Below are positions 25,265 to 52,800 of a DNA stretch of 64,000 bases, in pieces. Position 1 is the stretch's first letter. The number at the start of each line of letters is the position of its first letter. Under the pieces are notes generated by a model. The model was not told the DNA's origin and made no database searches. It saw nothing but the letters and a program-made list of their open reading frames with translations. Source of the stretch: Macrostomum lignano (Eukaryota); NCBI GenBank assembly GCA_002269645.1, contig NIVC01003832.1, positions 10,590-74,589 on the forward strand, given 5' to 3'. The translations under genes were made by a program, and so were the position numbers.

Positions 25265-25582
25265 CGGGGGGGTAACCCTCGCTCTTATTTGTCCCGTCAC
25301 AGTGTTATAGTAGCCATGTCCGATACACCCTACTTGTGTCAGTAGCCGCTACAGAAAACATTAGGTCTGATAAACGACCCCTGTTTCCACGGAAAATATC
25401 CGAGACCTTCAGTCATCAGTTTCGGCTGCAGAGTCAATTTAGCAGGCCGGTAAGAGAATTGAGACTGTTTCCTAGAAATCACTTGCGCGGCACTTTTCAG
25501 CAACCCCGTGGGATTTCGGGGCCAAACTCGATTTCTCCTAGGTTTTCTACCGCTTGGGTGAGCTGGGGAAGTCTAAATTCCT

Positions 25583-26050
25583 GACTGACTGACTGACTGA
25601 CTGACTGACTGACTGACTGACTGACTGACTGACTGACTGACTGACTGACTGACTGACTGACTGACTGACTGACTGACTGACTGACTGACTGACTGACTGA
25701 CTGACTGACTTGAGTGATTGGGTGACTGACTGACTGACTGACTTGAGTGATTGAGTGACTGACTGACTGACTGACTTGAGTGATTGGGTGACTGACTGAC
25801 TGACTGACTTGAGTGACTGGGTGACTGACTGACTGACTGACTTGAGTGATTGGGTGACTGACTGACTGACTGACTTGAGTGATTGGGTGACTACTGACTG
25901 ACTGACTTGAGTGATTGGGTGACTGACTGACTGACTGACTTGAGTGATTGGGTGACTACTGACTGACTAACTTGAGTGATTGGGTGACTGACTGACTGAC
26001 TGACTTGAGTGATTGGGTGACTGACTGACTGACTGACTGACTGACTCGAG
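25583..26050. repeat. (TGAC)n microsatellite grading into a composite tgagtgattgggtgactgac repeat
   Basis: Direct reading. Confidence 0.93.
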
Positions 26051-26689
26051 TGGGTGAGTGGCTCAGTGATTTATATTGCTGCTGACACATTAAAGCACCA
26101 GCATGATGAGGCTATAAACTGAGCAGTACTTGCCGATCCGTTGCTGCTGTTGCGGCTGCTGCATGCTGCCCAATCTTGCGGGACTTCCCAAACAGTTCCC
26201 TGTGTTTAGTCCATGCACGGTCAAGCCGTCAATTCTTCCTCTTTCAAACTATTTATACGTGAATTCACTTTTGCTGCGACGGACTTCATCTTGACTTGAA
26301 AATCAGCTGGCGACGCGGGCGGACAGGGGAAGCACCTGTCAGGACTCGTTCTCTTTGAAGGATTTGTGGCAGCAGCTGCAGCAGCAGCAGAAGCAGCAGA
26401 GCTTGGTTCGTCAAACGTCTGCATCACCCCAGGAACAGGGCGCAGGGAGGCTTTCCTTTTGTGTCTTCAATCAGCTCGCTTTGCTTAAGCTCGCCAGCCA
26501 TGCAATATGCCATAAGCCGGGCCCCCGCACCAGTCTCAGCTCAATCGTCATTGCGGATGGTAAAGCACTCGCGGTATCTTTGGCGACATTCTTAATTTAG
26601 AATATCAAAATCTGGACGGTTTGACTTTAAAGAAGAAAGCTTTTTACGGCATTACGGCCCTTTTTGCGAACCATTCAAACAAGAGCAAC

Positions 26690-27030
26690 TCAGTCTCAGC
26701 AACTCAGCCTCAACAACTCAGAAATCAGAAACTCAGCCTCAGCAAATGAGCCTCAGCAAATCAGCCTCAGCAAATCAGCCTCGGCAACCAGCCTCAGCAA
26801 CTCAGCCTCAGCAACTCAGCCTCAGCAACTCAGAAATCAGAAACTCAGCCTCAGCAAATGAGCCTCAGCAAATGAGCCTCAGCAAATCAGCCTCGGCAAC
26901 TCAGCCTCAGCAACTCAGCCTCAGCAACTCAGCCTCAGCAACTCAGAAATCAGAAACTCAGCCTCAGCCTCAGCAACTCAGCCTCAGCAACTCACCCCTA
27001 GCAACTCAGCCTCAGCAACTCAACCGCTAA
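26690..27030. repeat. (ctcagcaa/ctcagc)n composite repeat
   Basis: Direct reading. Confidence 0.88.
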
Positions 27031-28088: not shown

Positions 28089-29323
28089 CTACAGTGGTCC
28101 TTGTGAATGGCTACAGTGGTCCTTGTGAATGGCTACAGTGGTCCTTGTGAATGGCTACAGTGGTCCTTGTGAATGGCTACAGTGGTCCTTGTGAATGGCT
28201 ACAGTGGTCCTTGTGAATGGCTACAGTGGTCCTTGTGAATGGCTACAGTGGTCCTTGTGAATGGCTACAGTGGTCCTTGTGAATGGCTACAGTGGTCCTT
28301 GTGAATGGCTACAGTGGTCCTTGTGAATGGCTACAGTGGTCCTTGTGAATGGCTACAGTGGTCCTTGTGAATGGCTACAGTGGTCCTTGTGAATGGCTAC
28401 AGTGGTCCTTGTGAATGGCTACAGTGGTCCTTGTGAATGGCTACAGTGGTCCTTGTGAATGGCTACAGTGGTCCTTGCAAATGGCTACAGTGGTCCTTGC
28501 GAATGGCTACAGTGGTCCTTGTGAATGGCTACAGTGGTCCTTGTGAATGGCTACAGTGGTCCTTGTGAATGGCTACAGTGGTCCTTGTGAATGGCTACAG
28601 TGGTCCTTGTGAATGGCTACAGTGGTCCTTGTGAATGGCTACAGTGGTCCTTGTGAATGGCTACAGTGGTCCTTGTGAATGGCTACAGTGGTCCTTGTGA
28701 ATGGCTACAGTGGTCCTTGTGAATGGCTACAGTGGTCCTTGTGAATGGCTACAGTGGTCCTTGTGAATGGCTACAGTGGTCCTTGTGAATGGCTACAGTG
28801 GTCCTTGTGAATGGCTACAGTGGTCCTTGTGAATGGCTACAGTGGTCCTTGCAAATGGCTACAGTGGTCCTTGCGAATGGCTACAGTGGTCCTTGTGAAT
28901 GGCTACAGTGGTCCTTGTGAATGGCTACAGTGGTCCTTGTGAATGGCTACAGTGGTCCTTGTGAATGGCTACAGTGGTCCTTGTGAATGGCTACAGTGGT
29001 CCTTGTGAATGGCTACAATGGTCCTTGTGAATGGCTACAGTGGTCCTTGTGAATGGCTACAGTGGTCCTTGTGAATGGCTACAGTGGTCCTTGTGAATGG
29101 CTACAGTGGTCCTTGTGAATGGCTACAGTGGTCCTTGTGAATGGCTACAGTGGTCCTTGTGAATGGCTACAATGGTCCTTGTGAATGGCTACAGTGGTCC
29201 TTGTGAATGGCTACAGTGGTCCTTGTGAATGGCTACAGTGGTCCTTGTGAATGGCTACAGTGGTCCTTGTGAATGGCTACAGTGGTCCTTGTGAATGGCT
29301 ACAATGGTCCTTGTGAATGGCTA
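28089..29323. repeat. Homogeneous minisatellite, 22-nt unit (ctacagtggtccttgtgaatgg) x56
   Basis: 28089-29320 = 1232 nt = 56 x 22. Confidence 0.96.
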
Positions 29324-35614: not shown

Positions 35615-36043
35615 ATGGGCACATTCTTAGGCCACCTGCTGCCTGGCGCATTCTTCCTGCTATTTGCGCTGTGGTGGCTCTACTCCGTGCTCAGCCGTTA
35701 CTACAGGGCTAAGTACAGGCGGGGCCCAGCCTACCGGTCCACTGTAGTTTATCCCTGCTGCTGCTGCTGCGTCCGTCTGCCCTTAGAGGGCTTTATAAAA
35801 ATGATCTGCTGCGGCATCGGCTTTACAGCCGAGCTCGTAACTGCATTTGAAAATCGCCAATTCACCTTCTTTGGCAATGGGCAGCACGCCACCATGTACG
35901 CCTGCTTTGCCATGTCGGGCTTAGTTGACATCCTGGCGCATTGCAAAGCTCCACTGCCGCCTGGCACAGACTATGCAGTCTGCCTGATGGCCTTCTGCGT
36001 AGAGGCCATCCTGTTCACCTTCCATCTGCACGGCCGCACTCAG
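35615..36043 (+). CDS. TMEM45: TMEM45 exon 1 (143 codons)
   Basis: ATG 35615; CAG|gttaga donor. Confidence 0.92.
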
Positions 36044-39000
36044 GTTAGATGTCGGGCATTTTGTAGTTTTAAACACTATGAGTGTTCGTGTCCTGACACC
36101 AAGAAACATGAACTTCATAAACCATAAATTTGACAATGTCAGACTACACTTAAGCCTTCAGAAACCATAAATTTGACAATGTCAGACTACACTTAAGCCT
36201 TCAGAAACCATAAATTTGACAATGTCAGACTACACTTAAGCCTTCAGAAACCATGAATTTGACAATGTCAGACTAAACTTAAGCCTTCAGAAACCATAAA
36301 TTTGACAATGTCAGACTACACTTAAGCCTTCAGAAACCATGAATTTGACAATGTCAGACTACACTTAAGCCTTCAGAAACCATGAATTTGACAATGTCAG
36401 ACTACACTTAAGCCTTCAGAAACCATAAATTTGACAATGTCAGACTACACTTAAGCCTTCAGAAACCATAAATTTGACAATGTCAGGCTACACTTAAGCC
36501 TTCAGAAACCATAAATTTGACAATGTCAGACTACACTTAAGCCTTCATAAACCATGAATTTGACAATGTCAGACTACACTTGAGCCTTCAGAAACCATAA
36601 ATTCGACAATGTCAGACTACACTTAAGCCTTCATAAACCATGAATTTGACAATGTCAGACTACACTTAAGCCTTCAGAAACCATAAATTTGACAATGTCA
36701 GGCTACACTTAAGCCTTCAGAAACCATAAATTTGACAATGTCAGACTACACTTAAGCCTTCATAAACCATGAATTTGACAATGTCAGACTACACTTAAGC
36801 CTTCAGAAACCATGAATTCGACAATGTAAGACTACACTTAAGCCTTCAGAAACCATGAATTTGACAATGTCAGACTACACTTAAGCCTTCAGAAACCATG
36901 AATTTGACAATGTCAGACTACACTTAAGCCTTCAGAAACCATGAATTTGACAATGTCAGACTACACTTAAGCCTTCAGAAACCATAAATTCGACAATGTC
37001 AGACTACACTTAAGCCTTCAGAAACCATAAATTTGACAATGTCAGACTACACTTAAGCCTTCAGAAACCATAAATTCGACAATGTCAGACTACACTTGAG
37101 CCTTCAGAAACCATAAATTTGACAATGTCAGACCAGTGGCGTAGCCAGGAATTTCAATTGGGGACGGGGCCGGGTTGGTCTGGCTGGCCATGCCTTATGC
37201 CATTGCCACTTTTGGCGCCGCAGGTGCTCATTTTGGCGCCGCAGGCACCCATTTGGCGCCACAGGCTCTCATTTTGGCGCCGCAGGCACTCATTTGGCGC
37301 AACAGGCACTCATTTTGGCGCCGCAGGCACTCATTTGGCGCCGCAGGCACTCATTTTGGCGCCGCAGGCACTCATTTGGCTCCACAGGCACTCATTTTTG
37401 CGCCGCAGGCACTCATTTGGCGCAACAGGCACTCATTTTGGCGCCGCAGGCACTCATTTGGCGCAACAGGCACTCATTTTGGCGCCGCAGGCACTCATTT
37501 GGCGCCACAGGCACTCATTTGGCGCCACAGGCACTCATTTTGGCGCCGCAGGCACTCATTTGGCGTCACAGGCACTCATTTTGGCGCCGCAGGCACTCAT
37601 TTGGCGCCACAGGCACTCATTTTGGCGCCGCGGAACTCAATTGCCTCCTGGTTTTTGGTATCCGCCGCGCCCAACCCCACCCCCCAGGCGATTTGGGGGG
37701 GCCTCGGCCCCCCGCCCCCCCCCTGGCTACGCCACTGTGTCAGACTACACTAAGCCTTCATAAACCATAAATTTGACAATGTCAGACTACACTAAGCAGA
37801 TAGAAGACTTCATACAGCCAATTAATAATTTTCATCTCCGCGAAAGGAATCTGAACAGAGTGAGAACTTGAATCCATCTATAATTTAAAGGTAAATATCA
37901 ACATGAAGTATTATTTGAGTTGCCGATGCATTTCGTCCATTTGCATTAGGACATCGTCAGGGTCTTTTTATTGAGAAACAATTTGAACGAATATTCAGTA
38001 TATATAGATAGTTGAGAGTAACAAGAGTAGTTGAATTGAGTTTTTAATTGATGGTTTAAAACTTGTACATAGTAATCAATTTTTGATACAGTATTGGTTG
38101 GGTAAAGTGCATATCAGTTTCAAGCCAGTCCGGTCATTGACAAATCAGCTAAAAAATTCTGAGTTGACGGCTAGCCCCACCCATCGCAAGTTGGTTATTT
38201 AACGTGGGCTGTTTGGTCTTAATGTACAGGGCTTCTAATAGGCAGAGCATGTGATCTCTATTACAAAAATCAATAGCCTTTATCATTTCGTGTGGTTCAG
38301 CCTCACAACAAGAATTGCAGGTTAGCAGGTGTTCGTTAATAGCAGAGTTTTTTAGCCAGTGCTCTCTGACCCTCGTGTATAAGTGTCGTTTAGTTTTTCC
38401 TATGTAGGAGATGCTCTGGTCCTCAGAGCAAACAAATTTATACACGACACCAGCCGCGAGAGGACGTGGAACACTGGATTTCAACTTGCAGACAAACTTA
38501 GCAATCTTTTCGGTGCGAAACACAACACGGATTTGAGTGTTTAAGTCTTTACGGAGCAGCTTTTCTAACTTCTTTTTAAACTCTATAGAACAAACACCAA
38601 AGTAAGGCAAAGTGATCAAGGGACATTCAGAGGTGGAATCACGAACTTTCATCCGATTAGGTTCAGTCAGTTTGTCATTGAGAAAAGAGTTGACAATTTT
38701 CATCACAAAGTTCTTAGGATAGCCATTGTAGCTGAGCAGATTGGTGAGGATTTCAACTTCGTTGTGGAAAAGTCTCCAAGAGCTGCAAGTGGAAAAAGCC
38801 CGGTGAAGAAAGCAACGAATCAATCCGGTTTTCCATTGTCTAGGGCACAAGGCGTCAAACCTAAGCATAAGCCCGGTAAAGCTAGGTTTCCTATACACGC
38901 TGGTCGAAATAGTTTCATCGGTGGCGTCAACGTCAATGTCTAAGAAAGGAAGTCTCCTGCCTCCCCCCTCCGCCGTGAATTTGATATTCTCATGAGTAGA

Positions 39001-42000
39001 ATTGATTAACTTAAAAAACTCGTCCTTCTTAGCTTCGTCCTCAAAGATCGCAAACGTGTCATCGACGTAGCGTTTGTAGAAGTGAGGCGCACAAGGGAGG
39101 GCCATCCAGTCCTTCTCCCAGTGGGCCATGCATAAATTAGCGAGGGTTGGGGCGAGAGGGCTGCCCATGGCACACCCATCAATCTGTCTGTAATATTTGT
39201 CCCGAAAAAGAAAGATGCCGGAGGTGGCGAATTTGAGCATCTTCTTAAAAGTGGCTTTGGAGAAAGGAGGTGGATCGGTTTTTTCATACACAAGATCAGC
39301 AGCCAGCTCAATGGTGAAATCGAGAGGGATGTTGGTGAACAGTGAAACAACATCAAAGCTATAAAGCCTGTCAGTTTGATTAATCGTGGTATTGCTGAGG
39401 CTCTCAATAAACTGTTTATTGGATCCCACACAGTGCTCAGAAGGAATAACAGGTTTAATTAAATTGTCAAGGAATTTGGCTAGCTCATACTCTGAAGTGT
39501 TGATCATCGAAACAATTGGTCTTAAAGGATGACCATCCTTATGAACTTTGCACAGACCATACAGTTGTCCAGGTTGGCTACCATTTGGGACAATCACCTT
39601 AAAAATCTCAGGGCTCACATGCGGCTTGACATAAGTTCTCAAAAAATTCTGAAGAGATCTTTCATTTTTCAGAATCGGGTGGGTCATAGTGACTTTATCG
39701 GCGGTACCAAGGCATTGAAACTTGAGTTTGTCCTGGATCACTTTCTCAAGTTTCTCGAAATAATCATTACTGTCTAAGACAGCAACGCCATAGCCTTTAT
39801 CGTAACCAACGATCTTGATGTTGTCATTGTTCTTGAGACCGTTCATAGTCTGGTGCATAAGCCTATTGCTTTTCTTGTTAACGTATCCTTGAGCTCTACA
39901 GATAAACTTTTCAAATTCAGCAATGATACGGTGTTTAAGCTTATCGGGTGGCGGCGCTGTTCCACCCGATAAGCTTAAACACCGTATCATTGCTGAATTT
40001 GAAAAGTTTATCTGTAGAGCTCAAGGATACGTTAACAAGAAAAGCAATAGGCTTATGCACCAGACTATGAACGGTCTCAAGAACAATGACAACATCAAGA
40101 TCGTTGGTTACGATAAAGGCTATGGCGTTGCTGTCTTAGACAGTAATGATTATTTCGAGAAACTTGAGAAAGTGATCCAGGACAAACTCAAGTTTCAATG
40201 CCTTGGTACCGCCGATAAAGTCACTATGACCCACCCGATTCTGAAAAATGAAAGATCTCTTCAGAATTTTTTGAGAACTTATGTCAAGCCGCATGTGAGC
40301 CCTGAGATTTTTAAGGTGATTGTCCCAAATGGTAGCCAACCTGGACAACTGTATGGTCTGTGCAAAGTTCATAAGGATGGTCATCCTTTAAGACCAATTG
40401 TTTCGATGATCAACACTTCAGAGTATGAGCTAGCCAAATTCCTTGACAATTTAATTAAACCTGTTATTCCTTCTGAGCACTGTGTGGGATCCAATAAACA
40501 GTTTATTGAGAGCCTCAGCAATACCACGATTAATCAAACTGACAGGCTTTATAGCTTTGATGTTGTTTCACTGTTCACCAACATCCCTCTCGATTTCACC
40601 ATTGAGCTGGCTGCTGATCTTGTGTATGAAAAAACCGATCCACCTCCTTTCTCCAAAGCCACTTTTAAGAAGATGCTCAAATTCGCCACCTCCGGCATCT
40701 TTCTTTTTCGGGACAAATATTACAGACAGATTGATGGGTGTGCCATGGGCAGCCCTCTCGCCCCAACCCTCGCTAATTTATGCATGGCCCACTGGGAGAA
40801 GGACTGGATGGCCCTCCCTTGTGCGCCTCACTTCTACAAACGCTACGTCGATGACACGTTTGCGATCTTTGAGGACGAAGCTAAGAAGGACGAGTTTTTT
40901 AAGTTAATCAATTCTACTCATGAGAATATCAAATTCACGGCGGAGGGGGGAGGCAGGAGACTTCCTTTCTTAGACATTGACGTTGACGCCACCGATGAAA
41001 CTATTTCGACCAGCGTGTATAGGAAACCTAGCTTTACCGGGCTTATGCTTAGGTTTGACGCCTTGTGCCCTAGACAATGGAAAACCGGATTGATTCGTTG
41101 CTTTCTTCACCGGGCTTTTTCCACTTGCAGCTCTTGGAGACTTTTCCACAACGAAGTTGAAATCCTCACCAATCTGCTCAGCTACAATGGCTATCCTAAG
41201 AACTTTGTGATGAAAATTGTCAACTCTTTTCTCAATGACAAACTGACTGAACCTAATCGGATGAAAGTTCGTGATTCCACCTCTGAATGTCCCTTGATCA
41301 CTTTGCCTTACTTTGGTGTTTGTTCTATAGAGTTTAAAAAGAAGTTAGAAAAGCTGCTCCGTAAAGACTTAAACACTCAAATCCGTGTTGTGTTTCGCAC
41401 CGAAAAGATTGCTAAGTTTGTCTGCAAGTTGAAATCCAGTGTTCCACGTCCTCTCGCGGCTGGTGTCGTGTATAAATTTGTTTGCTCTGAGGACCAGAGC
41501 ATCTCCTACATAGGAAAAACTAAACGACACTTATACACGAGGGTCAGAGAGCACTGGCTAAAAAACTCTGCTATTAACGAACACCTGCTAACCTGCAATT
41601 CTTGTTGTGAGGCTGAACCACACGAAATGATAAAGGCTATTGATTTTTGTAATAGAGATCACATGCTCTGCCTATTAGAAGCCCTGTACATTAAGACCAA
41701 ACAGCCCACGTTAAATAACCAACTTGCGATGGGTGGGGCTAGCCGTCAACTCAGAATTTTTTAGCTGATTTGTCAATGACCGGACTGGCTTGAAACTGAT
41801 ATGCACTTTACCCAACCAATACTGTATCAAAAATTGATTACTATGTACAAGTTTTAAACCATCAATTAAAAACTCAATTCAACTACTCTTGTTACTCTCA
41901 ACTATCTATATATACTGAATATTCGTTCAAATTGTTTCTCAATAAAAAGACCCTGACGATGTCCTAATGCAAATGGACGAAATGCATCGGCAACTCAAAT

Positions 42001-44807
42001 AATACTTCATGTTGATATTTACCTTTATTTATCTACTCTTCATCAAGCGAGCCACTTTACCATCTATAATTTATCTCAGATTGACGTGGTCCTGCACACC
42101 CTGCTGGTGTACACGGTCTGGTGCTGCGTGCTGGCACTGCTGCTAGAATTGCGCAGGCCCCGGTCTCCGCTGCCAGCCCTGGCCCGCTGCTTTTTCACCG
42201 CCCTGCAGGGCAGCTGGTTTATCCAGGTACGAGACTGCTGATCGCGTTTCTTATCGATCTACCGCAAATTAGACTTTAGCCAGGCAAAACCACTGATACT
42301 GGAATAACCAGATGGGCCACTCAGCACATTTGCGTATAAACTACTTTCAGTTCAGTAGTAAGTTAAACAGAAGCATTTTAATGTATTTTTAAAGCCAAGG
42401 CTCATTTATTGGCTCTTATCCCCCACAGCTTAAACCCCCCCCAACCGCGCCTTTCCACTAAGTATCCATGCCTGAGTGGCCCATCTGGTTATTTTAGTAT
42501 CTGTGGGCAAAACTGGGGGTACTGCACAGCCCGTTGAAAAAGGATACCGTGACAAGAATCGCAAAGAGTCATTGCAATCAACTCACTAGTGACTCTAGCG
42601 ACCCTGGTGTGACTCTTGTGAATTTTTAACAACTCAAACGACTGAAATGCCACGTAGTAGAGGCGACTTTTGAGGCAGGACCAGTCGTCCAAGAGTCGTT
42701 GTGTTAGCGCTAAACTCTCTACTAACTCAAGTAGGCAAAATAGAGTTGTTGTAAATGCGAAATGCGATTTTAATTCGTTCTAAGTGACGCATATGCGCTC
42801 TACGGCAGTAAAAATATTACATACCCCAATTTTCAATTGCACATTTTCCAATTACAAATTAAATATTAAGGTACCAAACCAAATGGTAGGGTATTCTACA
42901 GGAATTCTAGCTATACAGTCTACACTGCACCGCACCCACAAAGAACGGAAGAAAAGAGCTTAATTTCAATCAACCAAGTTGGCCAAAAAACTTTTCGATG
43001 TATTTCTGCATTACAAGAATAAAGGCAACACTTAGTGACCAGCCAGACACAAAGAGACACATTGTGACAATTGGCGAGCAAGGCGAGCAACGCGCGGGAG
43101 GCGCACAGCGAATAAGCGACCTCCAAACCCAAAGCGAGCAAGCGATCAAAAGCAGAAGGCTGGGAGCTAAAACAAAGCAGAGACACTACCGGCAAAAGTC
43201 ACAGCAGCCTCCGCTGTCTGGTGAAACTGGGGGAGATAACGCTGCACAGCCTCACTTCTCCAGTCACCAATGTGCATGATATCAGACACTGGGAGGCCTA
43301 GCACAGACGCCCAGATAGCTCCTCCTCGTCGCAGACTGTGCGCGGAGTAAGATCCTGGTCGAACGCCGGCTGCGGCAAACTTGTCACGGAGGAAGCAGTC
43401 CAGGTGCTTCCCAGTCAGCAGGCGCAAGCCGCCACTTCCATCGGCGTAGGACCAGAGCGGTGACTCCGGGTGGGGGCCACACAGATGCACAGAGACCGCA
43501 AGGGCCGGGCTGATCACTAAAGCCGGTTTGCACAGGCGCAAGCACCCATGCAAACCAAAGCATTGTGTTGCAAAGCGTCGTAGGCAAAAATACGCACGCC
43601 GAAACTCATTTCCTCGACGTGGCCCACAACCAAGAACACGCGTTAAAAAGAATCGGAGGCTACCACCACGAGTCAGTTTGAAATACAAATAAGACAACAC
43701 CCAAATACCGCAATGACCAGTCCAAGGGTCCTGAATAGCAAAGCGACTGCGAGCTGGCTGGAAGGGTAAGGGAGGCAAAAAGTGTTTTCATAGGATTCGT
43801 AGGATTCTTGGAAAGAGGAGAGAAAAAGGAGAGTATTTTGCTAGAACCAATCTACTACCGACCGAACAGGACATATATTTGGTTCAAAAAGATCAGTAGT
43901 CAAAATCAACGCTACTCATTACCAGTAGGCAATAGCCAATTCAAGCGAGCCAATAGGATTCCCTGGATATGGGCTGCACCCACAGATACTAAAATAATAC
44001 GTAAAATAAAAAATTAACATAGAAATCTAATTTTCTGAACGAAAAGCTTTATAAATATCGATAGAGCAATAAAAAAGGCACAACATATCAAAAGATCAAC
44101 ACTGGATCTGCCTCCTATCAAAAGTAATAGCAATTTTTGTGCTCAAAAAATGAAAATTTCCTATCTCCGTAGTGTATTTTTTTCGGGAAAAAGTGCCTTC
44201 AAAAATTTTCTAAGAAACGAGGTTTCCCGTCCTTCTACTTAAGTGGTCCTTGATTTTTACATTGATCATTAATCTGTATTACATGGATTTGCACGATCAA
44301 CCCTTGTGTGAAAACTGTTACTTTAGAATGCTACATACACAGAGCTTTAATGCTATAGAGCTTTAATACTGAACTTTACCCCCTAAGAGGAAAGAGGAGA
44401 TGAGAGAAGAAATAAACCCTGAGCGGGCAGGATTGCTAATTGTGAAGTCTCGTATGCCGGAGTTTGGTGACACAGAAAGCTATTAATTAATTTTAATCAC
44501 ATCGCAGGTAGGCGCAATGCTCTACCCGCCTGTACCGTGGCTTCGCCAATTCCAATTAACAAAAGCTGAACACGACAGCATCATGTTGGCCACTGTGATA
44601 TTCGCTTGGCACGGCCTGGCCATATTCATATTTGCCCTGTGCCTGGCCATGCTCATCAGCCGCTATCACGCTCGCCGGGGTCCTATGGACGGCGGTGATA
44701 GGCGAGAGGTCAGCATGGAGCGGCTGATTAAATCTGACGGACAGAGCGGCCGAGGCGGCGGCGCCAGCGGCGTTGGAGTCGATGATGATGACGAGGATAG
44801 CGACTAG
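35615..44807 (+). CDS. TMEM45: TMEM45 family (DUF716) multipass membrane protein, 3 exons, 291 aa
   Basis: Exons 35615-36043, 42080-42226, 44508-44807, all phase 0. Motifs MGTFLGHLLPGAFF, QHATMY..FAMSGLVD, EAILFTFHLHGR, LQGSWFIQ, FAWH match my recollection of TMEM45A/B. Confidence 0.92.
36110..37795. repeat. Minisatellite, 43-nt unit (cagaaaccataaatttgacaatgtcagactacacttaagcctt), interrupted by the hAT MITE at 37134-37737
   Basis: About 24 copies before and 1-2 after the MITE. Confidence 0.94.
37134..37737. mobile_element. Non-autonomous hAT-type DNA transposon (MITE, 604 bp) with an internal minisatellite of about 21-22 nt
   Basis: 16-nt TIRs cagtggcgtagccagg / cctggctacgccactg; perfect 8-bp TSD tgtcagac (37126-37133 and 37738-37745); internal (ttggcgccgcaggcactcattt)n at about 37210-37630. 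Confidence 0.88.
37923..37962 (-). ncRNA. Mirror copy of the hammerhead-like motif (left arm)
   Basis: Exact reverse complement of 41951-41990. Confidence 0.68.
38149..39990 (-). CDS. Penelope-like RT + GIY-YIG endonuclease ORF (left arm, 613 aa)
   Basis: DKG motif, DVVSLFTNIP, QIDGCAMGSPLAP, RYVDD, LPFLD, GVVYKFVC...YIGKTKRHLYTRVREH, then H/C residues. Confidence 0.93.
   Translation of the reverse strand: MIRCLSLSGGTAPPPDKLKHRIIAEFEKFICRAQGYVNKKSNRLMHQTMNGLKNNDNIKIVGYDKGYGVAVLDSNDYFEKLEKVIQDKLKFQCLGTADKVTMTHPILKNERSLQNFLRTYVKPHVSPEIFKVIVPNGSQPGQLYGLCKVHKDGHPLRPIVSMINTSEYELAKFLDNLIKPVIPSEHCVGSNKQFIESLSNTTINQTDRLYSFDVVSLFTNIPLDFTIELAADLVYEKTDPPPFSKATFKKMLKFATSGIFLFRDKYYRQIDGCAMGSPLAPTLANLCMAHWEKDWMALPCAPHFYKRYVDDTFAIFEDEAKKDEFFKLINSTHENIKFTAEGGGRRLPFLDIDVDATDETISTSVYRKPSFTGLMLRFDALCPRQWKTGLIRCFLHRAFSTCSSWRLFHNEVEILTNLLSYNGYPKNFVMKIVNSFLNDKLTEPNRMKVRDSTSECPLITLPYFGVCSIEFKKKLEKLLRKDLNTQIRVVFRTEKIAKFVCKLKSSVPRPLAAGVVYKFVCSEDQSISYIGKTKRHLYTRVREHWLKNSAINEHLLTCNSCCEAEPHEMIKAIDFCNRDHMLCLLEALYIKTKQPTLNNQLAMGGASRQLRIF
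39923..41764 (+). CDS. Penelope-like RT + GIY-YIG endonuclease ORF (right arm, 613 aa)
   Basis: Mirror copy of 38149-39990 with the same RT and GIY-YIG motifs, uninterrupted. Confidence 0.93.
   Translation: MIRCLSLSGGGAVPPDKLKHRIIAEFEKFICRAQGYVNKKSNRLMHQTMNGLKNNDNIKIVGYDKGYGVAVLDSNDYFEKLEKVIQDKLKFQCLGTADKVTMTHPILKNERSLQNFLRTYVKPHVSPEIFKVIVPNGSQPGQLYGLCKVHKDGHPLRPIVSMINTSEYELAKFLDNLIKPVIPSEHCVGSNKQFIESLSNTTINQTDRLYSFDVVSLFTNIPLDFTIELAADLVYEKTDPPPFSKATFKKMLKFATSGIFLFRDKYYRQIDGCAMGSPLAPTLANLCMAHWEKDWMALPCAPHFYKRYVDDTFAIFEDEAKKDEFFKLINSTHENIKFTAEGGGRRLPFLDIDVDATDETISTSVYRKPSFTGLMLRFDALCPRQWKTGLIRCFLHRAFSTCSSWRLFHNEVEILTNLLSYNGYPKNFVMKIVNSFLNDKLTEPNRMKVRDSTSECPLITLPYFGVCSIEFKKKLEKLLRKDLNTQIRVVFRTEKIAKFVCKLKSSVPRPLAAGVVYKFVCSEDQSISYIGKTKRHLYTRVREHWLKNSAINEHLLTCNSCCEAEPHEMIKAIDFCNRDHMLCLLEALYIKTKQPTLNNQLAMGGASRQLRIF
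41951..41990 (+). ncRNA. Minimal type I hammerhead-ribozyme-like motif in the Penelope 3' region
   Basis: CUGACGA 41953-41959, extra U, stem II GUCC/GGAC, GAAA 41979-41982, palindromic stem III AUGCAU, AUC cleavage triplet ending 41988; stem I only 2 bp, so it may be weak. Confidence 0.7.
42080..42226 (+). CDS. TMEM45: TMEM45 exon 2 (IDVVLHTLLVY...LQGSWFIQ)
   Basis: tctcag acceptor, CAG|gtacga donor, 147 nt. Confidence 0.9.
42303..42493. mobile_element. Small MITE-like inverted-repeat element (about 190 bp) in TMEM45 intron 2
   Basis: 22-nt IR aataaccagatgggccactcag / ctgagtggcccatctggttatt. Confidence 0.45.
43167..43778 (-). pseudogene. Tyrosine recombinase C-terminal remnant of a DIRS-order (Ngaro/DIRS-like) retrotransposon
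   Basis: YSAHSLRRGGA (H-x-x-R) followed by IMHIGDWRSEAVQRYL (catalytic H/W and Y region); upstream part degenerate; no adjacent RT/RNase H seen. Confidence 0.75.
44508..44807 (+). CDS. TMEM45: TMEM45 exon 3 (VGAMLYPP...DDDDEDSD*)
   Basis: tcgcag acceptor, 300 nt ending in TAG; acidic C-terminus. Confidence 0.9.
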   Translation, partial: VGAMLYPPVPWLRQFQLTKAEHDSIMLATVIFAWHGLAIFIFALCLAMLISRYHARRGPMDGGDRREVSMERLIKSDGQSGRGGGASGVGVDDDDEDSD

Positions 44808-46899: not shown

Positions 46900-49800
46900 C
46901 TGCAATTTGGTAAATAGATGGAGGATATAGTGCATGTATGCATGCAGCTTGTAGGGATTGTTTACCTTCAGCCTGTGCATCTTCGATGGCAGCTGAAGAT
47001 CAGAAATGGAGAAGAGGCTACCAGATAATCTGGATGAAACAAGATACATGTAAATCAAGAGGCTACCTGAAAGTCTACCCCAGAGTATCAATGAAGACGC
47101 TACCTGAAAGTCTACTTCAGAATATCAATGAAAAGGCAACCTGAAAGTGTACCCTCGAAGACGAATGAAATGGCTACATGAAATTCTACCCCAGAAGATG
47201 AACGAAGCTACCTGAAAGTCTAACCCAGGGTAACAATGAAGAGGCTACCTGAAAGTCTACCCAAGAATATCAATGAAGAGGCTACCTTAAAATCTACCCT
47301 TAAAAATCAATTAAGAGACTACTTAAAAGTCTACCCTTAAAGATCAAGAAAGGACTACCTGAAAACCTACCCGAAGCACTTAAAGATCAATGAAGAGACT
47401 TTAAGACTCCCAAGAAAATGTGAGCTGAGAAAACTACAGCAAGTTTGAAAGTCTACCTGAGTCATCTGTTAGATGATGAATGAGGCTACATAAAAAGTCT
47501 ATATTTAATAAATCTGAAGTGCACCCGAGCCACCAGCAGTGCTCAATGACCACTGCTCACCCTTGCGATAATGATAGTCGGCATCAATGTGGCGCAGGTG
47601 GCCGTGCCTGACCGAGCAGCCGAGCAGCCAGCGGATGCGGCTGGCAAAGTGCTCAACTAGTTCGTACTTCTCCGGGTCGGCGAGCCAGTTCTGGCGGACG
47701 CAGCGTAACGAGTTGATCATGACGGCAACGAACACGTTCAGCAGGGTGAGGCACACGAACAGCATAAAGGCAAAGAAGAACAGCATGGCCAGGCCGCCTC
47801 CGTCTGAGAACAGGCTTTTGAACTCCATGCTGTCTGCAGTTGGGGGGTAGGGCAGTAAACTTGATCTAACACAAAAAATAACAGTGATGCTCGTTCGCAC
47901 TACTAGAGCAGATCAGTAGTTAACGCGGCCGACTGCTACGTTAAAGAACCCGGGTTCGATTCCGCACGCAGCCAAAGTAACTTTGGGGTCTAGCCAGGGC
48001 CGCTGTACACCCTGTGAGCGCTGTGTCAGGAAGCTTCTCGAGTCAAGGTGCCCGCAGTTCACGTTTACTTGTAGTAAATGGTGCTTATAATATTTATACA
48101 ATTGATCATTGACAGAGCTTTCCACAGGCAAAGGGGTGAGGTTCTTGTCCTCATAGTCTGGCCCTCTTGTGACTGTTGGCCTAAATTAATGAGCCTTGTT
48201 AGTAGCCCCCCTGAGCTCCATCTGCCAGTGCATGAGCCTCACTAGTAGCCCCCCTGAGCTCCATCTGCCAGTGCATGAGCCTCACTAGTAGCCCCCCCCC
48301 CTGAGCCCCATCTGCCAGTGAGCCTCACTAGTAGCCCCCCCCCCTGAGCTCCATCTGCCAGTGCATGAGCCTCACTAGTAGCCCCCCCCCTGAGCCCCAT
48401 CTGCCAGTGAGCCTCACTAGTAGCCCCCCCTGAGCCCCATCTGCCAGTGAGCCTCACTAGTAGCCCCCCCCTTAAGCCCCATCTGCCAGTGAGCCTCACT
48501 AGTAGCCCCCCCCTGAGCCCCATCTGCCAGTGAGCCTCACTAGTAGCCCCCCCCTGAGCCCCATCTGCCAGTGAGCCTCACTAGTAGCCCCCCCCTGAGC
48601 CCCATCTGCCAGTGAGCCTCACTAGTAGCCCCCCCCCTGAGCCCCATCTGCCAGTGAGCCTCACTAGTAGCCCCCCCCCTGAGCCCCATCTGCCAGTGAG
48701 CCTCACTAGTAGCCCCCCCCCTGAGCCCCATCTGCCAGTGAGCCTCACTAGTAGCCCCCCCCCTGAGCCCCATCTGCCAGTGAGCCTCACTAGTAGCCCC
48801 CCCCCCTGAGCCCCATCTGCCAGTGAGCCTCACTAGTAGCCCCCCCCCCTTAAGCCCCATCTGCCAGTGAGCCTCACTAGTAGCCCCACCCTCAAGCTCC
48901 ATCTGCCAGTGAGCCTCACTAGTAGCCAGGATGCTCAGCGCCTCCGCAGCCGCGGTGAAGCTTCGAAACTCCCGAATCGAGCAGGCGAACAGCAGGTGGC
49001 CGGCCAGCACGAACGCTACAAACAGAAGGCCGGCCATCAGGCCGAAAGTAAGCAGCGGCTTAGTCGCGGTTTTCAGCACCTCTAGCAGCAGAACTCCTCG
49101 ACGGTTGAAGTTGAGCAGGCGAAGGAACCGAATGGTGAAGAGGAACACAATGATGCCGATGAACACCTGGTTGATCTGCGGGTTCGGAGTTGGCAGTAAT
49201 CTCAGGTAGATACACCTATCTCCATAAACTCAAGTTGATGTTCTCATGTCTACAAACTCAAGTAGATGCTCTCATATGTCTACAAACTCAAGTAGATGCT
49301 CTCATATGTCTATAAGCTCAAGTAGATGCTCTCATATGTCTACAAACTCAAGTAGATGCTCTCATATGTCTATAAGCTCAAGTAGATGCTCTCATATGTC
49401 TACAAACTCAAGTAGATGTTCTCATATGTCTATAAACTCAAGTAGATGCTCTCATATGTCTACAAACTCAAGTAGATGCTCTCATATGTCTACAAACTCA
49501 AGTAGATGCTCTCATATCTCTATAAACTCAGGTAGCTCAGGCCAAACTCCGTACCTCATCGTACACAATCAGCCACTGGAAGTCGATAAACTTGTCCGAG
49601 TTGGCCTGCATGAAGCTGGCCAAAGCCTGCTGCACAGCAATCTTCACCAGGTAGAGAACCACCTCGGCTGTGCAGAACAGCAGCAGGCAGATGTCTAGGC
49701 ACTTGAACTGGTCCTGGTGTCATTTTTGTGAAAGGCATTGTTAATTTGGAACATTTTAGTGAAGTTTTCGAGGTACATATATGGACCTTCACCAAAGCGA

Positions 49801-52800
49801 TGTTTATTTTAGACTCAACACAAATCTATCCCATCCCCATCTACTCTATCCCATCCCCATCTATCCTATCCTCCTTCCCATCTACTCTATCCCATCCCCA
49901 TCTACTCTATCCCATCCCTATCTACTCTATCCCATCCCCATCTACTCTATCCCATCCCCATCTACTCTATCCCATCCCCATCTACTCTATCCTCATTCCC
50001 ATTTACTCTATCCCATCCCCATCTACTCTATCCCATCCCCATCTACTCTATCCCATCCCCATCTACTCTATCCCATCCCCATCTACTCTATCCCATCCCC
50101 ATCTACTCTATCCCATCCCCATCTACTCTATCCCATCCCCATCTACTCTATCCCATCCCCATCTACTCTATCCCATCCCCATCTACTCTATCCCATCCCT
50201 ATCTACTCTATCCCATCCCCATCTACTCTATCCCATCCCCATCTATCCTATCCTCCTTCCCATCTACTCTATCCCATCCCCATCTACTCTATCCCATCCC
50301 CATCTACTCTATCCCATCCCCATCTACTCTATCCCATCCCCATCTACTCTATCCTCATTCCCATTTACTCTATCCCATCCCCATCTACTCTATCCCATCC
50401 CCATCTACTCTATCCCATCCCCATCTACTCTATCCCATCCCCATCTACTCTATCCCATCCCCATCTACTCTATCCCATCCCCATCTACTCTATCCCATCC
50501 CCATCTACTCTATCCATCCCCATCTACTCTATCCCATCCCCATCTACTCTATCCCATCCCTATCTACTCTATCCCATCCCCATCTACTCTATCCCATCCC
50601 CATCTACTCTATCCCTATCCCTATCTACTCTATCCCATCCCCATCTACTCTATCCCATCCCCATCTACTCTATCCCATCCCCATCTACTCTATCCCATCC
50701 CCATCTACTCTATCCCATCCCCATCTACTCTATTCCATCCCATACACTATCCAATGTCATACATCTACAAGCAAGCTACCTGAAACCATCCCAGATCCGC
50801 AAACTGTATTCCATACCTGTACAACAGCTTCCAATTTACCTGGAAATAGGCCCACCGCTTCCTCCACAGAGCCCGAGCCTCCCGGACGATGAAGGCGATG
50901 ACCAGCAGCAGGCTGGCCAGGTCCAGCAGAGCGTACAGCAGCGCCTCCGGTCCGCTGTAGCGGTCCAGCCGGATGGTGCGGATGCTCGGATTGGCCACGA
51001 AGCCGCCGCCCCTGTAGGCTTCGAACAGCAGGCTGGCGTAGGTGTACAGGTTGCTGGCCGGGTTGTACAGCAGCAGCTCCAGGACGACGCCGCGGCTCAG
51101 CCGGTCCAGCCAGTGCAGCGAGGACAGGTTTTTGATGGCGCCGCTGGCGCTCGAACGAGAGTCGCCAAGGTAAGCTGAGTATCCACCGCCTGAGTAGGTG
51201 GCGAGCAGGCCGGCCAGGGGCACGCCCAGAGAGTCCAGGGCGCTTGTGTAGCTCCACTCTGAGTAGGCCGGCCCGGCTGAGAAAGAAAGAGAATACGCGA
51301 GGCTTTTCAAAATTTCTGTTTTAAACTAGGTAATTTAGGTAGAAGATACGTATGCCAATATTAATAATATTAATAACTGCAGGAAGGTTGTCTTCTGCGA
51401 CATCGTCCAACAACCAGCGCTGACGACAGCACATGCAAGCGCCAATACTGTACGCAGACACGCACTTATCCACGCTCACACAGTGTATAGCGGCCCTGAC
51501 ATTCTAGTCGTCAGGCATGTACACTCTCTGTCCCAATTCTGGCCAATTTTCTGCCACATTTTTTTTTAATTTTTACTGCCACAGCTTGGTAGACTCGTAC
51601 CACCACACTTTCTCGTTTCGCAGAATTACACTTTAAAGAGCACTAAAAATTGTCGGGTGTCCTAATGGACTTGAGCAGCATCTACCTGATCCGTTTCGAA
51701 GCAGCCAGCCTGGCAGGTAGGCGCGCTCGTCATCGTAAACGAGTTCGTAATCCTCGATGCACGGGGGCACGGAGTCGGCGAATACTCCAGCAACACGGCA
51801 CGCCGCTTCCGGCTTCAGGCGCAGCTGGCGAAGCCGCGGCTGCCGAACCAGATAGTCGGCAAAGTCGCCAACCAGATTGCTGGCCAGCATGCCACAGGCC
51901 TTGCCGTTGTAGCACGCCATGGGGTACAGTGCGGGGACGACCGTGTTGTTCAGGTACTGCCAGAAATCCGGCGCGGTTTTCACCTGATCAATCGAATAGA
52001 TCGCTCCCTTGGAGAGCCGCGACTCAGCCAGGTGACTGGCTTCGAGCAGCATGCCCTGCAGGCTGGAGTTCTGCAGGTAGGCCCTGCTGTCCGTGTTGGT
52101 GTAAGCAGTCAGGACGAGGATGGTGAGGAAGATCAGGTAGAATATGGCGTCTCTGATCATGGCGTCCAGCTGCTTCTCTCGGAGTCTAAAATGTCGGATT
52201 GCAAACGTGCTCAAGAATCCCATTAAGCTTTTAATTACACTAACCATACTTCAATTCATCCATTCCTTACTGCTTTAACTTTCTAAAACATTATTGGTTT
52301 TGTAAATCCGATGTACTTTAGAGCCCCCCTTGGTCGCAGGGAGCAGAGTATGCAAAGTGCTACGTGATTCGGCGCCCTCACCTCAGCTTGCGCATCTGCT
52401 GAAGCACGTGCGGCTTCGGAGCTGTCGGCACTGCCAGCGATCTCAGGAACTGCCGCATGGCCTGCAGGTTGGAGGCGTCGCGCAACGGCAGGACCTCGTG
52501 AATTTTCGGCACGCCGCGTTTTTCCAGCTCCTGCATCATCTCGTCCTCGTCCTCGCTGACCTTCCCGAAGATCAGAGCATAGAACAGGATGACCAAAGCG
52601 ATCTTGATTGGCTGCACAAGCAGCACGGACTCCAGCACGGTGACGGCCATCGCGGCCAGCCATTCTGCTGTTTTCTTCTCGCCCAGGACGCCGCCAAACT
52701 CCACCATGAGGTAGACGCAGGCGGCCACGCTGGCAAAGGACAGCACGTAGCCAACGTAGTGCGACCACCACGGCAGCGGCCACACAGCAGATGCCAGACG

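What the first reader, a model, noticed from the sequence alone, without database searches (positions are those of the whole stretch)
37886..42059. 4.1-kb head-to-head palindrome of a Penelope-like retroelement inside TMEM45 intron 1
Seen: two 2066-nt arms are reverse complements around a 10-nt spacer (39952-39961). Each arm carries an intact RT + GIY-YIG ORF, and the two translations are identical after residue 13. The host exons on either side are unique and in the correct order. Established: Penelope-like elements are known to form tandem and inverted arrangements. Inference: the apparent arm identity implies a very recent event, probably cDNA fold-back or paired priming. The TMEM45 pre-mRNA would carry a dsRNA stem of about 2 kb ending 52 nt before the exon 2 acceptor. 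That is a candidate endo-siRNA/piRNA source or ADAR substrate that could silence the whole element family in trans, and a cruciform-prone fragile site.
Basis: partly seen in the sequence, partly recalled or inferred. Interest (0 to 1): 0.85.

Follow-up and report, generated by a model that had tools for sequence, protein, structure and literature searches.

The report
Young inverted-pair Penelope retroelement insertion
A perfect 4.2-kb palindrome in an intron of a flatworm (Macrostomum lignano) TMEM45B-like gene is a real, very recent Penelope-like retrotransposon insertion, but its head-to-head shape is already textbook for this element class, so it is a clean example rather than a new phenomenon.

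Summary
The arms are 37886-39951 and 39962-42027, 2066 nt each and 100% reverse-complementary, around a 10-nt spacer.

The window is the end of Macrostomum lignano contig NIVC01003832.1 (Mlig_3_7). The host gene is Mlig011478g3, a TMEM45B-like (DUF716) gene, and the insertion lies in intron 1.

Three other copies of this locus in the same assembly are precise empty sites. Each carries one copy of CCATCTATAATTTA, which flanks the insertion (37888-42059, 4172 nt) as a 14-bp target-site duplication. The insertion is therefore real, a single event, and younger than a haplotype or paralogue that is 99.9% identical downstream.

The architecture is the published Penelope-like element signature:
- a head-to-head inverted 5'-truncated copy;
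- a 32-nt "tail" at one end only;
- unit ends inside the first codons of the ORF (+19 and +51);
- a minimal hammerhead motif;
- a variable-length target-site duplication.

The ORFs are not intact. About 220 N-terminal residues are missing, and each ATG is borrowed from the opposite arm.

Only the exact symmetry of the arms is unusual. It could arise by snap-back self-priming or by priming from both nicked strands, and this remains unresolved. The dsRNA, siRNA, ADAR and fragile-site ideas are untested. Interest is modest.

The parts
37874..37887 (.). Left copy of the 14-bp target-site duplication CCATCTATAATTTA. The last 2 nt (TA) overlap the arm, so the junction is ambiguous by 2 nt (microhomology).
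   Evidence: Empty sites L005, L007 and L008 each carry this 14-mer once.
37886..39951 (-). Left arm: an inverted, 5'-truncated PLE copy without the tail. Its outer end corresponds to +19 of the element's ORF start.
39952..39961 (.). 10-nt non-palindromic spacer CGGCGCTGTT at the head-to-head junction. Its origin (element-derived loop or untemplated filler) is unresolved.
   Evidence: No close family member was available to decide its origin.
39962..42027 (+). Right arm: a direct, 5'-truncated PLE copy. It comprises the RT and GIY-YIG coding region, a 3' UTR and the first 19 nt of the next unit's ORF.
42028..42059 (+). 32-nt 'tail' (TTTATCTACTCTTCATCAAGCGAGCCACTTTA) present only on the right arm. 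It extends the terminal ORF-start remnant from codon 7 to codon 17.
42060..42073. Right copy of the 14-bp TSD. It lies at -20 to -7 relative to the exon 2 acceptor.
39923..41764 (+). 613-aa ORF of the right arm. Native PLE coding runs from 39962. Residues 1-13 are read across the centre from the other arm.
38149..39990 (-). Mirror 613-aa ORF of the left arm.
41953..41988 (+). Minimal type-I hammerhead motif: CUGACGA-U-GUCC(10-nt loop)GGAC-GAA-A[UGCA]U-C. It lies 20 nt upstream of the element's ATG at 42009.
   Evidence: Descriptor scan: only these two hits in 64 kb against 0.015 expected. The features match PMC4209133. Rfam does not call it.
37925..37960 (-). The same hammerhead motif in the left arm.
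42009..42059 (+). Start of the element ORF retained at the 3' end of the unit: MLIFTFIYLLFIKRATL. This fits the family N-terminal consensus M..L....LW.....SLPKLY.
   Evidence: The same arrangement occurs in L002 and L003 and is described in PMC3846280.
35615..36043 (+). Host gene coding exon 1 (Mlig011478g3, TMEM45B-like).
36044..42079 (+). Host intron 1 (6036 nt). 4172 nt of it is the insertion, and it also holds 43-nt and 41-nt tandem arrays.
42080..42226 (+). Host coding exon 2.
44508..44807 (+). Host coding exon 3, including the stop codon.

Best explanation
This is one recent retrotransposition event of an endonuclease-encoding Penelope-like element (PLE) into intron 1 of one copy (g3) of a TMEM45B-like gene in Macrostomum lignano. 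The RT has no CX2-5CxxC linker, which is Penelope/Poseidon-like. The GIY-YIG nuclease made nicks 14 bp apart in an AT-rich site, which produced the 14-bp duplication. Reverse transcription started inside the first codons of the next unit's ORF on a tandem-type template RNA. It started at the 'long' site (+51) for the right arm and at, or ending at, the 'short' site (+19) for the left arm. That difference leaves the family-typical 32-nt one-sided tail. cDNA synthesis stopped about 2.07 kb in, roughly 220 codons short of a full ORF. The second arm is an inverted copy of the same stretch, joined head-to-head through a 10-nt spacer. I see two ways the second arm could have formed. In the first (about 50% of my weight), the first cDNA snapped back, or the RT switched template onto the nascent cDNA, and copied it back outward. 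In the second (about 35%), both nicked strands primed cDNA synthesis, as a purified PLE protein does in vitro, and the two cDNAs stopped at the same point and were joined. Both copies are truncated and non-autonomous. Shown here: the structure, the TSD and empty sites, the truncation, the tail, the hammerhead motif, the host gene and the species. Inferred: the order of enzymatic steps.
For: The palindrome is exact. RT and GIY-YIG lie in one ORF. There are 1707 homologues, and full-length ones are 811-851 aa. Three paralogous or allelic loci in the same assembly are precise empty sites with a single 14-mer, and the window with 37888-42059 removed equals L005 exactly. The nearest empty copy differs by 2 mismatches and 3 gaps over 4943 nt downstream, while the arms show 0 differences over 2066 nt. 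The 32-nt one-sided tail and the unit end inside the ORF start match published PLE anatomy: a 31-bp tail with the pLTR covering the first 12 aa, or 22 aa with the tail, in Adineta Pen2a (PMC3846280); a 30-40-bp tail at one end with an adjacent inverted 5'-truncated copy (PMC8557442); and cleavage and extension of both strands with two RT start sites that define the tail (PMC11167929). Relative L003 has an inverted arm, a 24-nt one-sided tail and a 12-bp TSD. [quoted passage not shown] Both outer ends finish in CTTTA.
Against: No reads were inspected, so single-molecule support is assumed. The 100% arm identity may be inflated, because Pilon and Canu consensus with multimapping reads would homogenise the arms (methods in PMC5730564). 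No second member of this exact family was found (best 72% aa over part of the ORF). The family's usual start sites and the spacer's origin are therefore unknown. The inner symmetry favours snap-back, whereas the motif-bearing outer end favours dual priming, and neither sub-mechanism explains everything. Rfam does not call the hammerhead, and my descriptor was written after I had seen the motif. Only one of the two cysteines expected between GIY and YIG is present.
Confidence: 0.85

Rival explanations
1. The insertion acts as an intronic hairpin-RNA locus. The host pre-mRNA folds into a ~2-kb perfect dsRNA that is diced into endo-siRNAs or fed into the piRNA pathway (or edited), silencing the PLE family in trans.
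For: Geometry only. Both arms lie in one intron of an annotated, transcribed gene model. The central 410 nt fold at -373 kcal/mol and 1410 nt at -1355 kcal/mol as one hairpin. Small-RNA polarity switching across inverted Penelope halves has been reported in Adineta vaga (PMC3846280).
Against: No small-RNA, RNA-seq or editing data were accessible. No other family member was found to serve as a target. The insertion is in 1 of 4 locus copies and looks like a new, possibly polymorphic and possibly deleterious allele rather than a selected function. It sits 7-20 nt from a splice acceptor.
Confidence: 0.12
2. An ordinary 5'-truncated PLE insertion was later converted into a palindrome at the DNA level, either by fold-back repair of a break at its 5' junction or by replication template switching.
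For: Such events do give perfect arms with a short asymmetric spacer (general knowledge of inverted-duplication mechanisms). The inner symmetry would be expected.
Against: The left arm abuts the intact left TSD copy with no loss or duplication of host DNA. It ends exactly at a tail boundary bearing the same CTTTA end motif as the other arm. The same inverted-arm plus tail plus TSD layout recurs in an unrelated genome (L003) and throughout the PLE literature, which points to the integration reaction itself.
Confidence: 0.05
3. Assembly artefact: a PacBio missed-adapter or fold-back chimeric read, or a consensus error, created or symmetrised the palindrome.
For: Mlig_3_7 was built from PacBio CLR reads with Canu 1.4 and polished with Pilon (PMC5730564). 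The authors of PMC10733133 classify 36% of the assembly length as chimeric scaffolds. PLE inverted structures are known to trouble assemblies (PMC8557442).
Against: A fold-back read would put the same flank on both sides. Here the two flanks differ and are collinear with three empty loci. The arms are asymmetric at their outer ends in the element-specific way (32-nt tail), and the whole is bounded by a TSD. The feature lies about 22 kb from the contig end.
Confidence: 0.05

Closest known systems
Canonical EN+ Penelope-like element insertions, e.g. Pen2a_Av of Adineta vaga and Penelope/Poseidon (PMC3846280, PMC8557442)
   Same: Single ORF with RT and C-terminal GIY-YIG. Head-to-head inverted 5'-truncated copy. 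Optional ~30-bp tail on one end only. Unit end inside the first codons of the ORF. Short TSD of variable length. Hammerhead motif upstream of the ORF start. Frequent 5' truncation.
   Different: There is no full-length copy and no direct pseudo-LTR here. Both copies are truncated at the same nucleotide, so the whole insertion is a near-perfect palindrome. The usual form is a short inverted pLTR next to a longer copy, as in relative L003 (299 nt against 2.1 kb).
PAc (Poseidon of Anolis carolinensis) in vitro integration system (PMC11167929)
   Same: An AT-rich target, with ATT motifs at or near both TSD boundaries here. Two alternative RT start sites inside the ORF start whose spacing equals the tail. 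Both DNA strands can be cleaved and extended, which could yield inverted copies.
   Different: The start sites are at +19 and +51 here, against about +111-118 in PAc. The hammerhead lies wholly upstream of the ATG here, whereas it overlaps the ATG in PAc. Nothing was assayed for this element.
L1 'twin priming' inversions (from my own knowledge: Ostertag and Kazazian 2001)
   Same: Both nicked strands prime reverse transcription in one integration event, and the product contains an inverted segment bounded by one TSD.
   Different: Twin priming copies different parts of one RNA, giving an inversion without duplication. Here the two arms are the same 2066 nt.
Snap-back (hairpin) self-priming by reverse transcriptases (from my own knowledge; proposed for Penelope in PMC3846280)
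   Same: It gives two perfectly complementary arms joined by a loop of a few nucleotides, and inner ends that coincide.
   Different: It does not by itself predict that the second arm should stop exactly at the tail boundary with the CTTTA end motif.
Hairpin-RNA / inverted-repeat silencer loci, e.g. Drosophila hpRNA endo-siRNA genes and maize Mu killer (from my own knowledge)
   Same: A long transposon-derived inverted repeat that could be transcribed as one RNA.
   Different: No small RNAs, no evidence of selection and no known targets. Membership is untested.

Membership tests
Penelope-like elements (EN+, C-terminal GIY-YIG) | Single ORF with a PLE-type reverse transcriptase | tested here: met
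   Pfam RVT_1 E 3.6e-9. 1707 homologues at E<=1e-10, all with the RT plus HTH_animal (and often DUF8422) architecture. YVDD and other invariant RT residues are retained. No phylogeny against TERT or LINE RTs was made.
Penelope-like elements (EN+, C-terminal GIY-YIG) | C-terminal GIY-YIG endonuclease in the same ORF | tested here: met
   Pfam GIY-YIG E 1.1e-6 at residues 515-597. The conserved R, H, E and N positions are invariant in the alignment.
Penelope-like elements (EN+, C-terminal GIY-YIG) | [quoted passage not shown] | tested here: inconclusive
   Only one Cys lies between VYKF and YIG (VCSEDQSISYIG). C521, H544, H554, C558 and C561 are invariant among relatives, several of which also have a single Cys there.
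Penelope-like elements (EN+, C-terminal GIY-YIG) | Pseudo-LTR organisation (direct and/or inverted terminal repeats from tandem or inverted copies) | tested here: met
   The inverted form is present. The direct pLTR is absent in this copy. A direct pLTR is seen in relative L002 and an inverted one in L003.
Penelope-like elements (EN+, C-terminal GIY-YIG) | 30-40-bp 'tail' extension at only one end of the insertion | tested here: met
   32 nt at 42028-42059 on the right arm only. Relative L003 has a 24-nt tail.
Penelope-like elements (EN+, C-terminal GIY-YIG) | Unit 3' end includes the first codons of the ORF | tested here: met
   ATG at 42009 followed by MLIFTFIYLLFIKRATL, which matches the family N-terminal consensus in position. 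The same holds in L002 and L003.
Penelope-like elements (EN+, C-terminal GIY-YIG) | Target-site duplication of variable length bounding the whole complex insertion | tested here: met
   14-bp TSD, verified against three empty sites.
Penelope-like elements (EN+, C-terminal GIY-YIG) | Hammerhead ribozyme motif in the pLTR/UTR | tested here: met
   This is a sequence motif only. The full conserved core is present, together with the PLE-typical extra nucleotide after A9, a G10.1-C11.1 pair and a palindromic loop 3. There are 2 hits in 64 kb against 0.015 expected, and the features match those. It is not called by Rfam, and helix I is only about 2 bp. Cleavage cannot be tested here.
Penelope/Poseidon clade (versus Neptune, Nematis, Hydra, Naiad) | C-terminal EN without the CX2-5CxxC linker Zn-finger; placement by RT phylogeny | tested here: inconclusive
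   No CX2-5CxxC occurs between the RT and the GIY-YIG domain (criterion). No reference sequences were available for a tree.
hpRNA / endo-siRNA-generating inverted-repeat loci | Small RNAs of both polarities derived from the arms, with trans targets | not testable with these tools
   No small-RNA or RNA-seq data were accessible, and no other family copies were found.
L1-type twin-priming inversion | The inverted segment is a different part of the element, with no duplicated sequence between the arms | tested here: not met
   The arms are the same 2066 nt.

The most novel reading that the evidence does not exclude
The perfectly symmetric palindrome is a frozen snap-back intermediate of PLE integration. 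Still segregating against an empty allele in the DV1 laboratory line, it already works as an intronic hairpin-RNA gene whose siRNAs or piRNAs repress the source PLE family in trans. That would make it a natural, newborn 'Mu killer'-like silencer in a transgenesis-ready flatworm.
Probability: 0.1. Interest if true: 0.55.

Novelty: new member of a known kind. Interest (0 to 1): 0.3.

Why it matters
This is an unusually clean natural record of one PLE integration event. It has exact empty sites, a TSD, a one-sided tail, both putative RT start sites and an undecayed head-to-head junction, all in a laboratory model (M. lignano) with transgenesis, RNAi and existing read and small-RNA data. It could help decide between self-priming and dual-strand priming in the still poorly understood PLE transposition cycle. 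It also offers a ready test of whether a newborn 2-kb intronic hairpin triggers small-RNA production or disturbs splicing, since it sits 7-20 nt from an acceptor. It does not reveal a new kind of element or mechanism.

Tried and rejected
- **Rfam scans.** I ran Rfam at permissive E-values over 35-45 kb and over the 3' region alone. There was no hammerhead call. The only hits at the centre were MIR8742, mir-581 and mir-1743, all far below their gathering scores. These are generic long-hairpin matches and I rejected them as miRNA genes.
- **Spacer origin.** I searched the protein database with the whole ORF and with its N-terminal 237 aa. Nothing closer than 72% (partial) or 60% identity was found, so I could not tell whether the spacer reads as ...GAVPPDK or ...TAPPPDK in intact relatives.
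- **Exact look-ups.** An exact-protein look-up of the 613-aa ORF found nothing on record. I got round this through the homology search and cluster members.
- **Other copies of the family.** I looked in the window and in about 64 kb of paralogous contigs. The only find was a divergent PLE endonuclease remnant (55% aa) at L007:8055-8414.
- **Two independent insertions.** I considered this and rejected it, because one TSD bounds the whole structure and removing the insertion restores the empty site exactly.
- **Annealing through GCGC.** I considered that two identical run-off cDNAs annealed through the GCGC in the spacer. That predicts a fully palindromic 12-nt centre (AACAGCGCTGTT), which is not what is observed.
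Full report
**1. Observation**

The inverted repeat is exactly as described. The arms are 37886-39951 and 39962-42027, 2066 nt each and 100% complementary, and the spacer is 39952-39961 = CGGCGCTGTT. It is the only copy of this sequence in the window.

Each arm carries a 613-aa open frame with RVT_1 and GIY-YIG domains. The two translations differ only at residues 11 and 13. A 2-kb perfect inverted repeat cannot arise by chance.

**2. Where it is**

The spliced product of three + strand exons (35615-36043, 42080-42226, 44508-44807) is a 291-aa DUF716/TMEM45 protein. The Pfam match has E 2.2e-24 and runs across both junctions.

This product is 100% identical to Macrostomum lignano 'Transmembrane protein 45B' / BOX15_Mlig011478g3. 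Locus L006 from contig NIVC01003832.1 of assembly GCA_002269645.1 (Mlig_3_7) is 100% identical to the window over 14 kb. The offsets show that the window is the last 64,000 nt of that 74,589-nt contig.

Intron 1 is 36044-42079, and the right arm ends 52 nt before exon 2.

**3. The insertion is real and recent**

A 14-bp direct repeat, CCATCTATAATTTA, lies at 37874-37887 and 42060-42073.

The same assembly contains three more copies of the locus: g2 = L005, g1 = L007 and g4 = L008. In each, the alignment to the window stops at 37887 and resumes at 42060, with the 14-mer present once. Deleting 37888-42059 from the window reproduces the L005 site base for base.

This is a classical empty site. 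It fixes the insertion at 4172 nt with a 14-bp TSD, where the last 'TA' is shared with the arm end as a 2-nt ambiguity.

L005 differs from the window by 2 mismatches and 3 gaps over 4943 nt downstream, and by about 1.1% upstream. L007 and L008 differ by about 2%, which is the published inter-subgenome level in this neopolyploid (PMC10733133).

If the insertion were as old as the g2/g3 split, 2-20 differences between the arms would be expected. None is seen. Two caveats apply:
- Pilon and Canu consensus with multimapping reads could homogenise the arms (methods in PMC5730564).
- Arm-to-arm gene conversion is possible.

**4. What the element is**

Full-length relatives are 811-851 aa. The window's native coding sequence starts at PPDKLKHR, which aligns to about residue 216-247 of those relatives.

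Both copies therefore lack roughly the N-terminal quarter of the ORF and the 5' UTR. Each ATG, together with the first 10-13 codons, is read from the opposite arm across the centre. The RT (YVDD) and GIY-YIG catalytic positions are intact and there are no stop codons, which fits a fresh copy of an active master. The copies themselves are dead on arrival.

The 3' part of each arm contains three features:
- a 244-nt UTR;
- a minimal type-I hammerhead motif at 41953-41988 (mirror at 37925-37960);
- the start of the element's own ORF (ATG at 42009, MLIFTFIYLLFIKRATL), which fits the family N-terminal consensus (..SLPKLY follows in relatives).

The hammerhead motif reads CUGACGA-U-GUCC...GGAC-GAA-A[UGCA]U-C. 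[quoted passage not shown] A descriptor scan finds only these two sites in the window, against 0.015 expected in shuffles. The descriptor was written after I had seen the motif, and Rfam does not call it.

The left arm ends at +19 of the ORF start. The right arm continues for 32 nt more, to +51.

**5. Comparison with the literature**

- **Craig et al. [quoted passage not shown]
- **Arkhipova et al. 2013.** They describe Pen2a_Av with an inverted pLTR, a 31-bp tail on one of the inverted pLTRs, a pLTR covering the first 12 aa (22 aa with the tail) and a 9-bp TSD. They infer self-priming from palindromic head-to-head junctions.
- **Frangieh et al. 2024.** They show that a purified PLE protein cleaves and extends both strands at AT-rich (ATT) sites. 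Reverse transcription starts at two adjacent internal sites within the ORF start, and the spacing of those sites is the tail.

The window matches every item. I also checked relatives directly:
- L002 (825-aa ORF) shows the direct partial-tandem pLTR running into the ORF start.
- L003 (44% aa identity, another organism) shows a 299-nt inverted arm abutting a 2.1-kb 5'-truncated copy, a 24-nt one-sided tail and a 12-bp TSD, again with a 'TA' overlap.

The architecture is therefore canonical. Only the equal length of the two arms is special.

**6. Mechanism**

The TSD and the empty sites establish a single integration event. How the second arm formed is inferred.

*Snap-back or template switch onto the nascent cDNA.* The bottom-strand-primed cDNA starts at +51, reaches the truncation point, folds back with a ~10-nt loop and copies itself outward. 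It then joins the left flank through 2-nt microhomology. This explains the identical arms and the coincident inner ends. It also requires the tailed arm to be the first one made.

*Dual-strand priming.* This explains why the tail-less end sits at a tail boundary and carries the same terminal CTTTA as the tailed end, as expected for a second RT start site. It also explains asymmetric cases such as L003. However, it needs both cDNAs to stop within 10 nt of each other, for example at the 5' end of a truncated template RNA.

I weight these about 50:35. The spacer's origin would decide between them, but no close family member was retrievable.

**7. Rivals**

*Assembly fold-back artefact.* This is unlikely. 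The two flanks differ and are collinear with the empty loci, the outer ends are asymmetric in the element-specific way, and the feature lies 22 kb from the contig end. Read-level confirmation is still missing.

*Post-insertional DNA-level inverted duplication.* This would require no flank loss and a coincidental stop at the tail boundary.

*A functional hairpin-RNA role.* This is geometrically possible, since the centre folds as one hairpin (-373 kcal/mol for 410 nt), but it is untested. The allele looks new: it is in 1 of 4 locus copies.

The insertion sits at -20 to -7 from the exon 2 acceptor. It therefore displaces the ancestral branch-point region about 4.2 kb upstream. Such a change may be tolerated because three other copies of the gene exist.

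**8. Verdict**

This is a new member of a known kind: a young, dead-on-arrival PLE insertion with the canonical head-to-head, tail and TSD architecture.

Its value is as a clean specimen for PLE integration mechanics and as a testable newborn intronic hairpin. It is not a novel phenomenon. Interest 0.3.

Noticed in passing
window 36113-37133, 37211-37629, 37751-37793: Intron 1 holds a 43-nt satellite (about 24 units, 96% matches). A 41-nt GC-rich array interrupts it, and one orphan 43-mer follows, so one tandem array sits inside another. The 43-mer copy number differs among the four paralogous loci: about 24 units in the window and L005, about 6 in L007 and L008.
   Followed up: partly
window 1127-1490, 3282-4422, 7738-8043, 9348-9717, 10050-10629, 11428-13353, 15729-16169, 17350-18130, 20729-21465, 22386-22951, 25581-26046, 26684-27022, 28089-29323, 48206-48927, 49226-49535, 49825-50741: The window is densely packed with long tandem arrays (periods 6-168 nt). 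Several have extreme strand composition skew (GC skew -0.68 at 17-18 kb and -0.76 at 50-51 kb). This fits the reported ~15% tandem-repeat content of M. lignano.
   Followed up: no
window ~46760 onward, - strand (L006:21173-29220): The neighbouring annotated gene encodes a 2100-aa polycystin-like protein with REJ, PLAT, Polycystin_dom and PKD_channel domains.
   Followed up: no
L007:8055-8414: A divergent PLE endonuclease-domain remnant (55% aa identity to residues 468-591 of the window ORF) lies upstream of the g1 copy of the host gene and is absent from the window. At least one other, older PLE lineage therefore exists in this genome.
   Followed up: no
window 42290-42324 / 42472-42506: A 35-nt inverted repeat (91% complementary, 147 nt apart) lies in host intron 2. 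It may be a small MITE-like element.
   Followed up: no
window 39835-40078: Rfam gives miRNA-family 'hits' (MIR8742, mir-581, mir-1743) at E down to 5e-13 but far below their gathering scores. They arise only because any long perfect hairpin fits these models. This is a trap for automated annotation.
   Followed up: yes
L003:4709-7155 and window 37886 / 42027 / 42059: All four outer element ends (two elements, two ends each) finish in ...TA. In both elements the tail-less end overlaps the TSD by 'TA'. This may point to a UA dinucleotide at PLE reverse-transcription start sites, or to 2-nt primer-template microhomology.
   Followed up: partly
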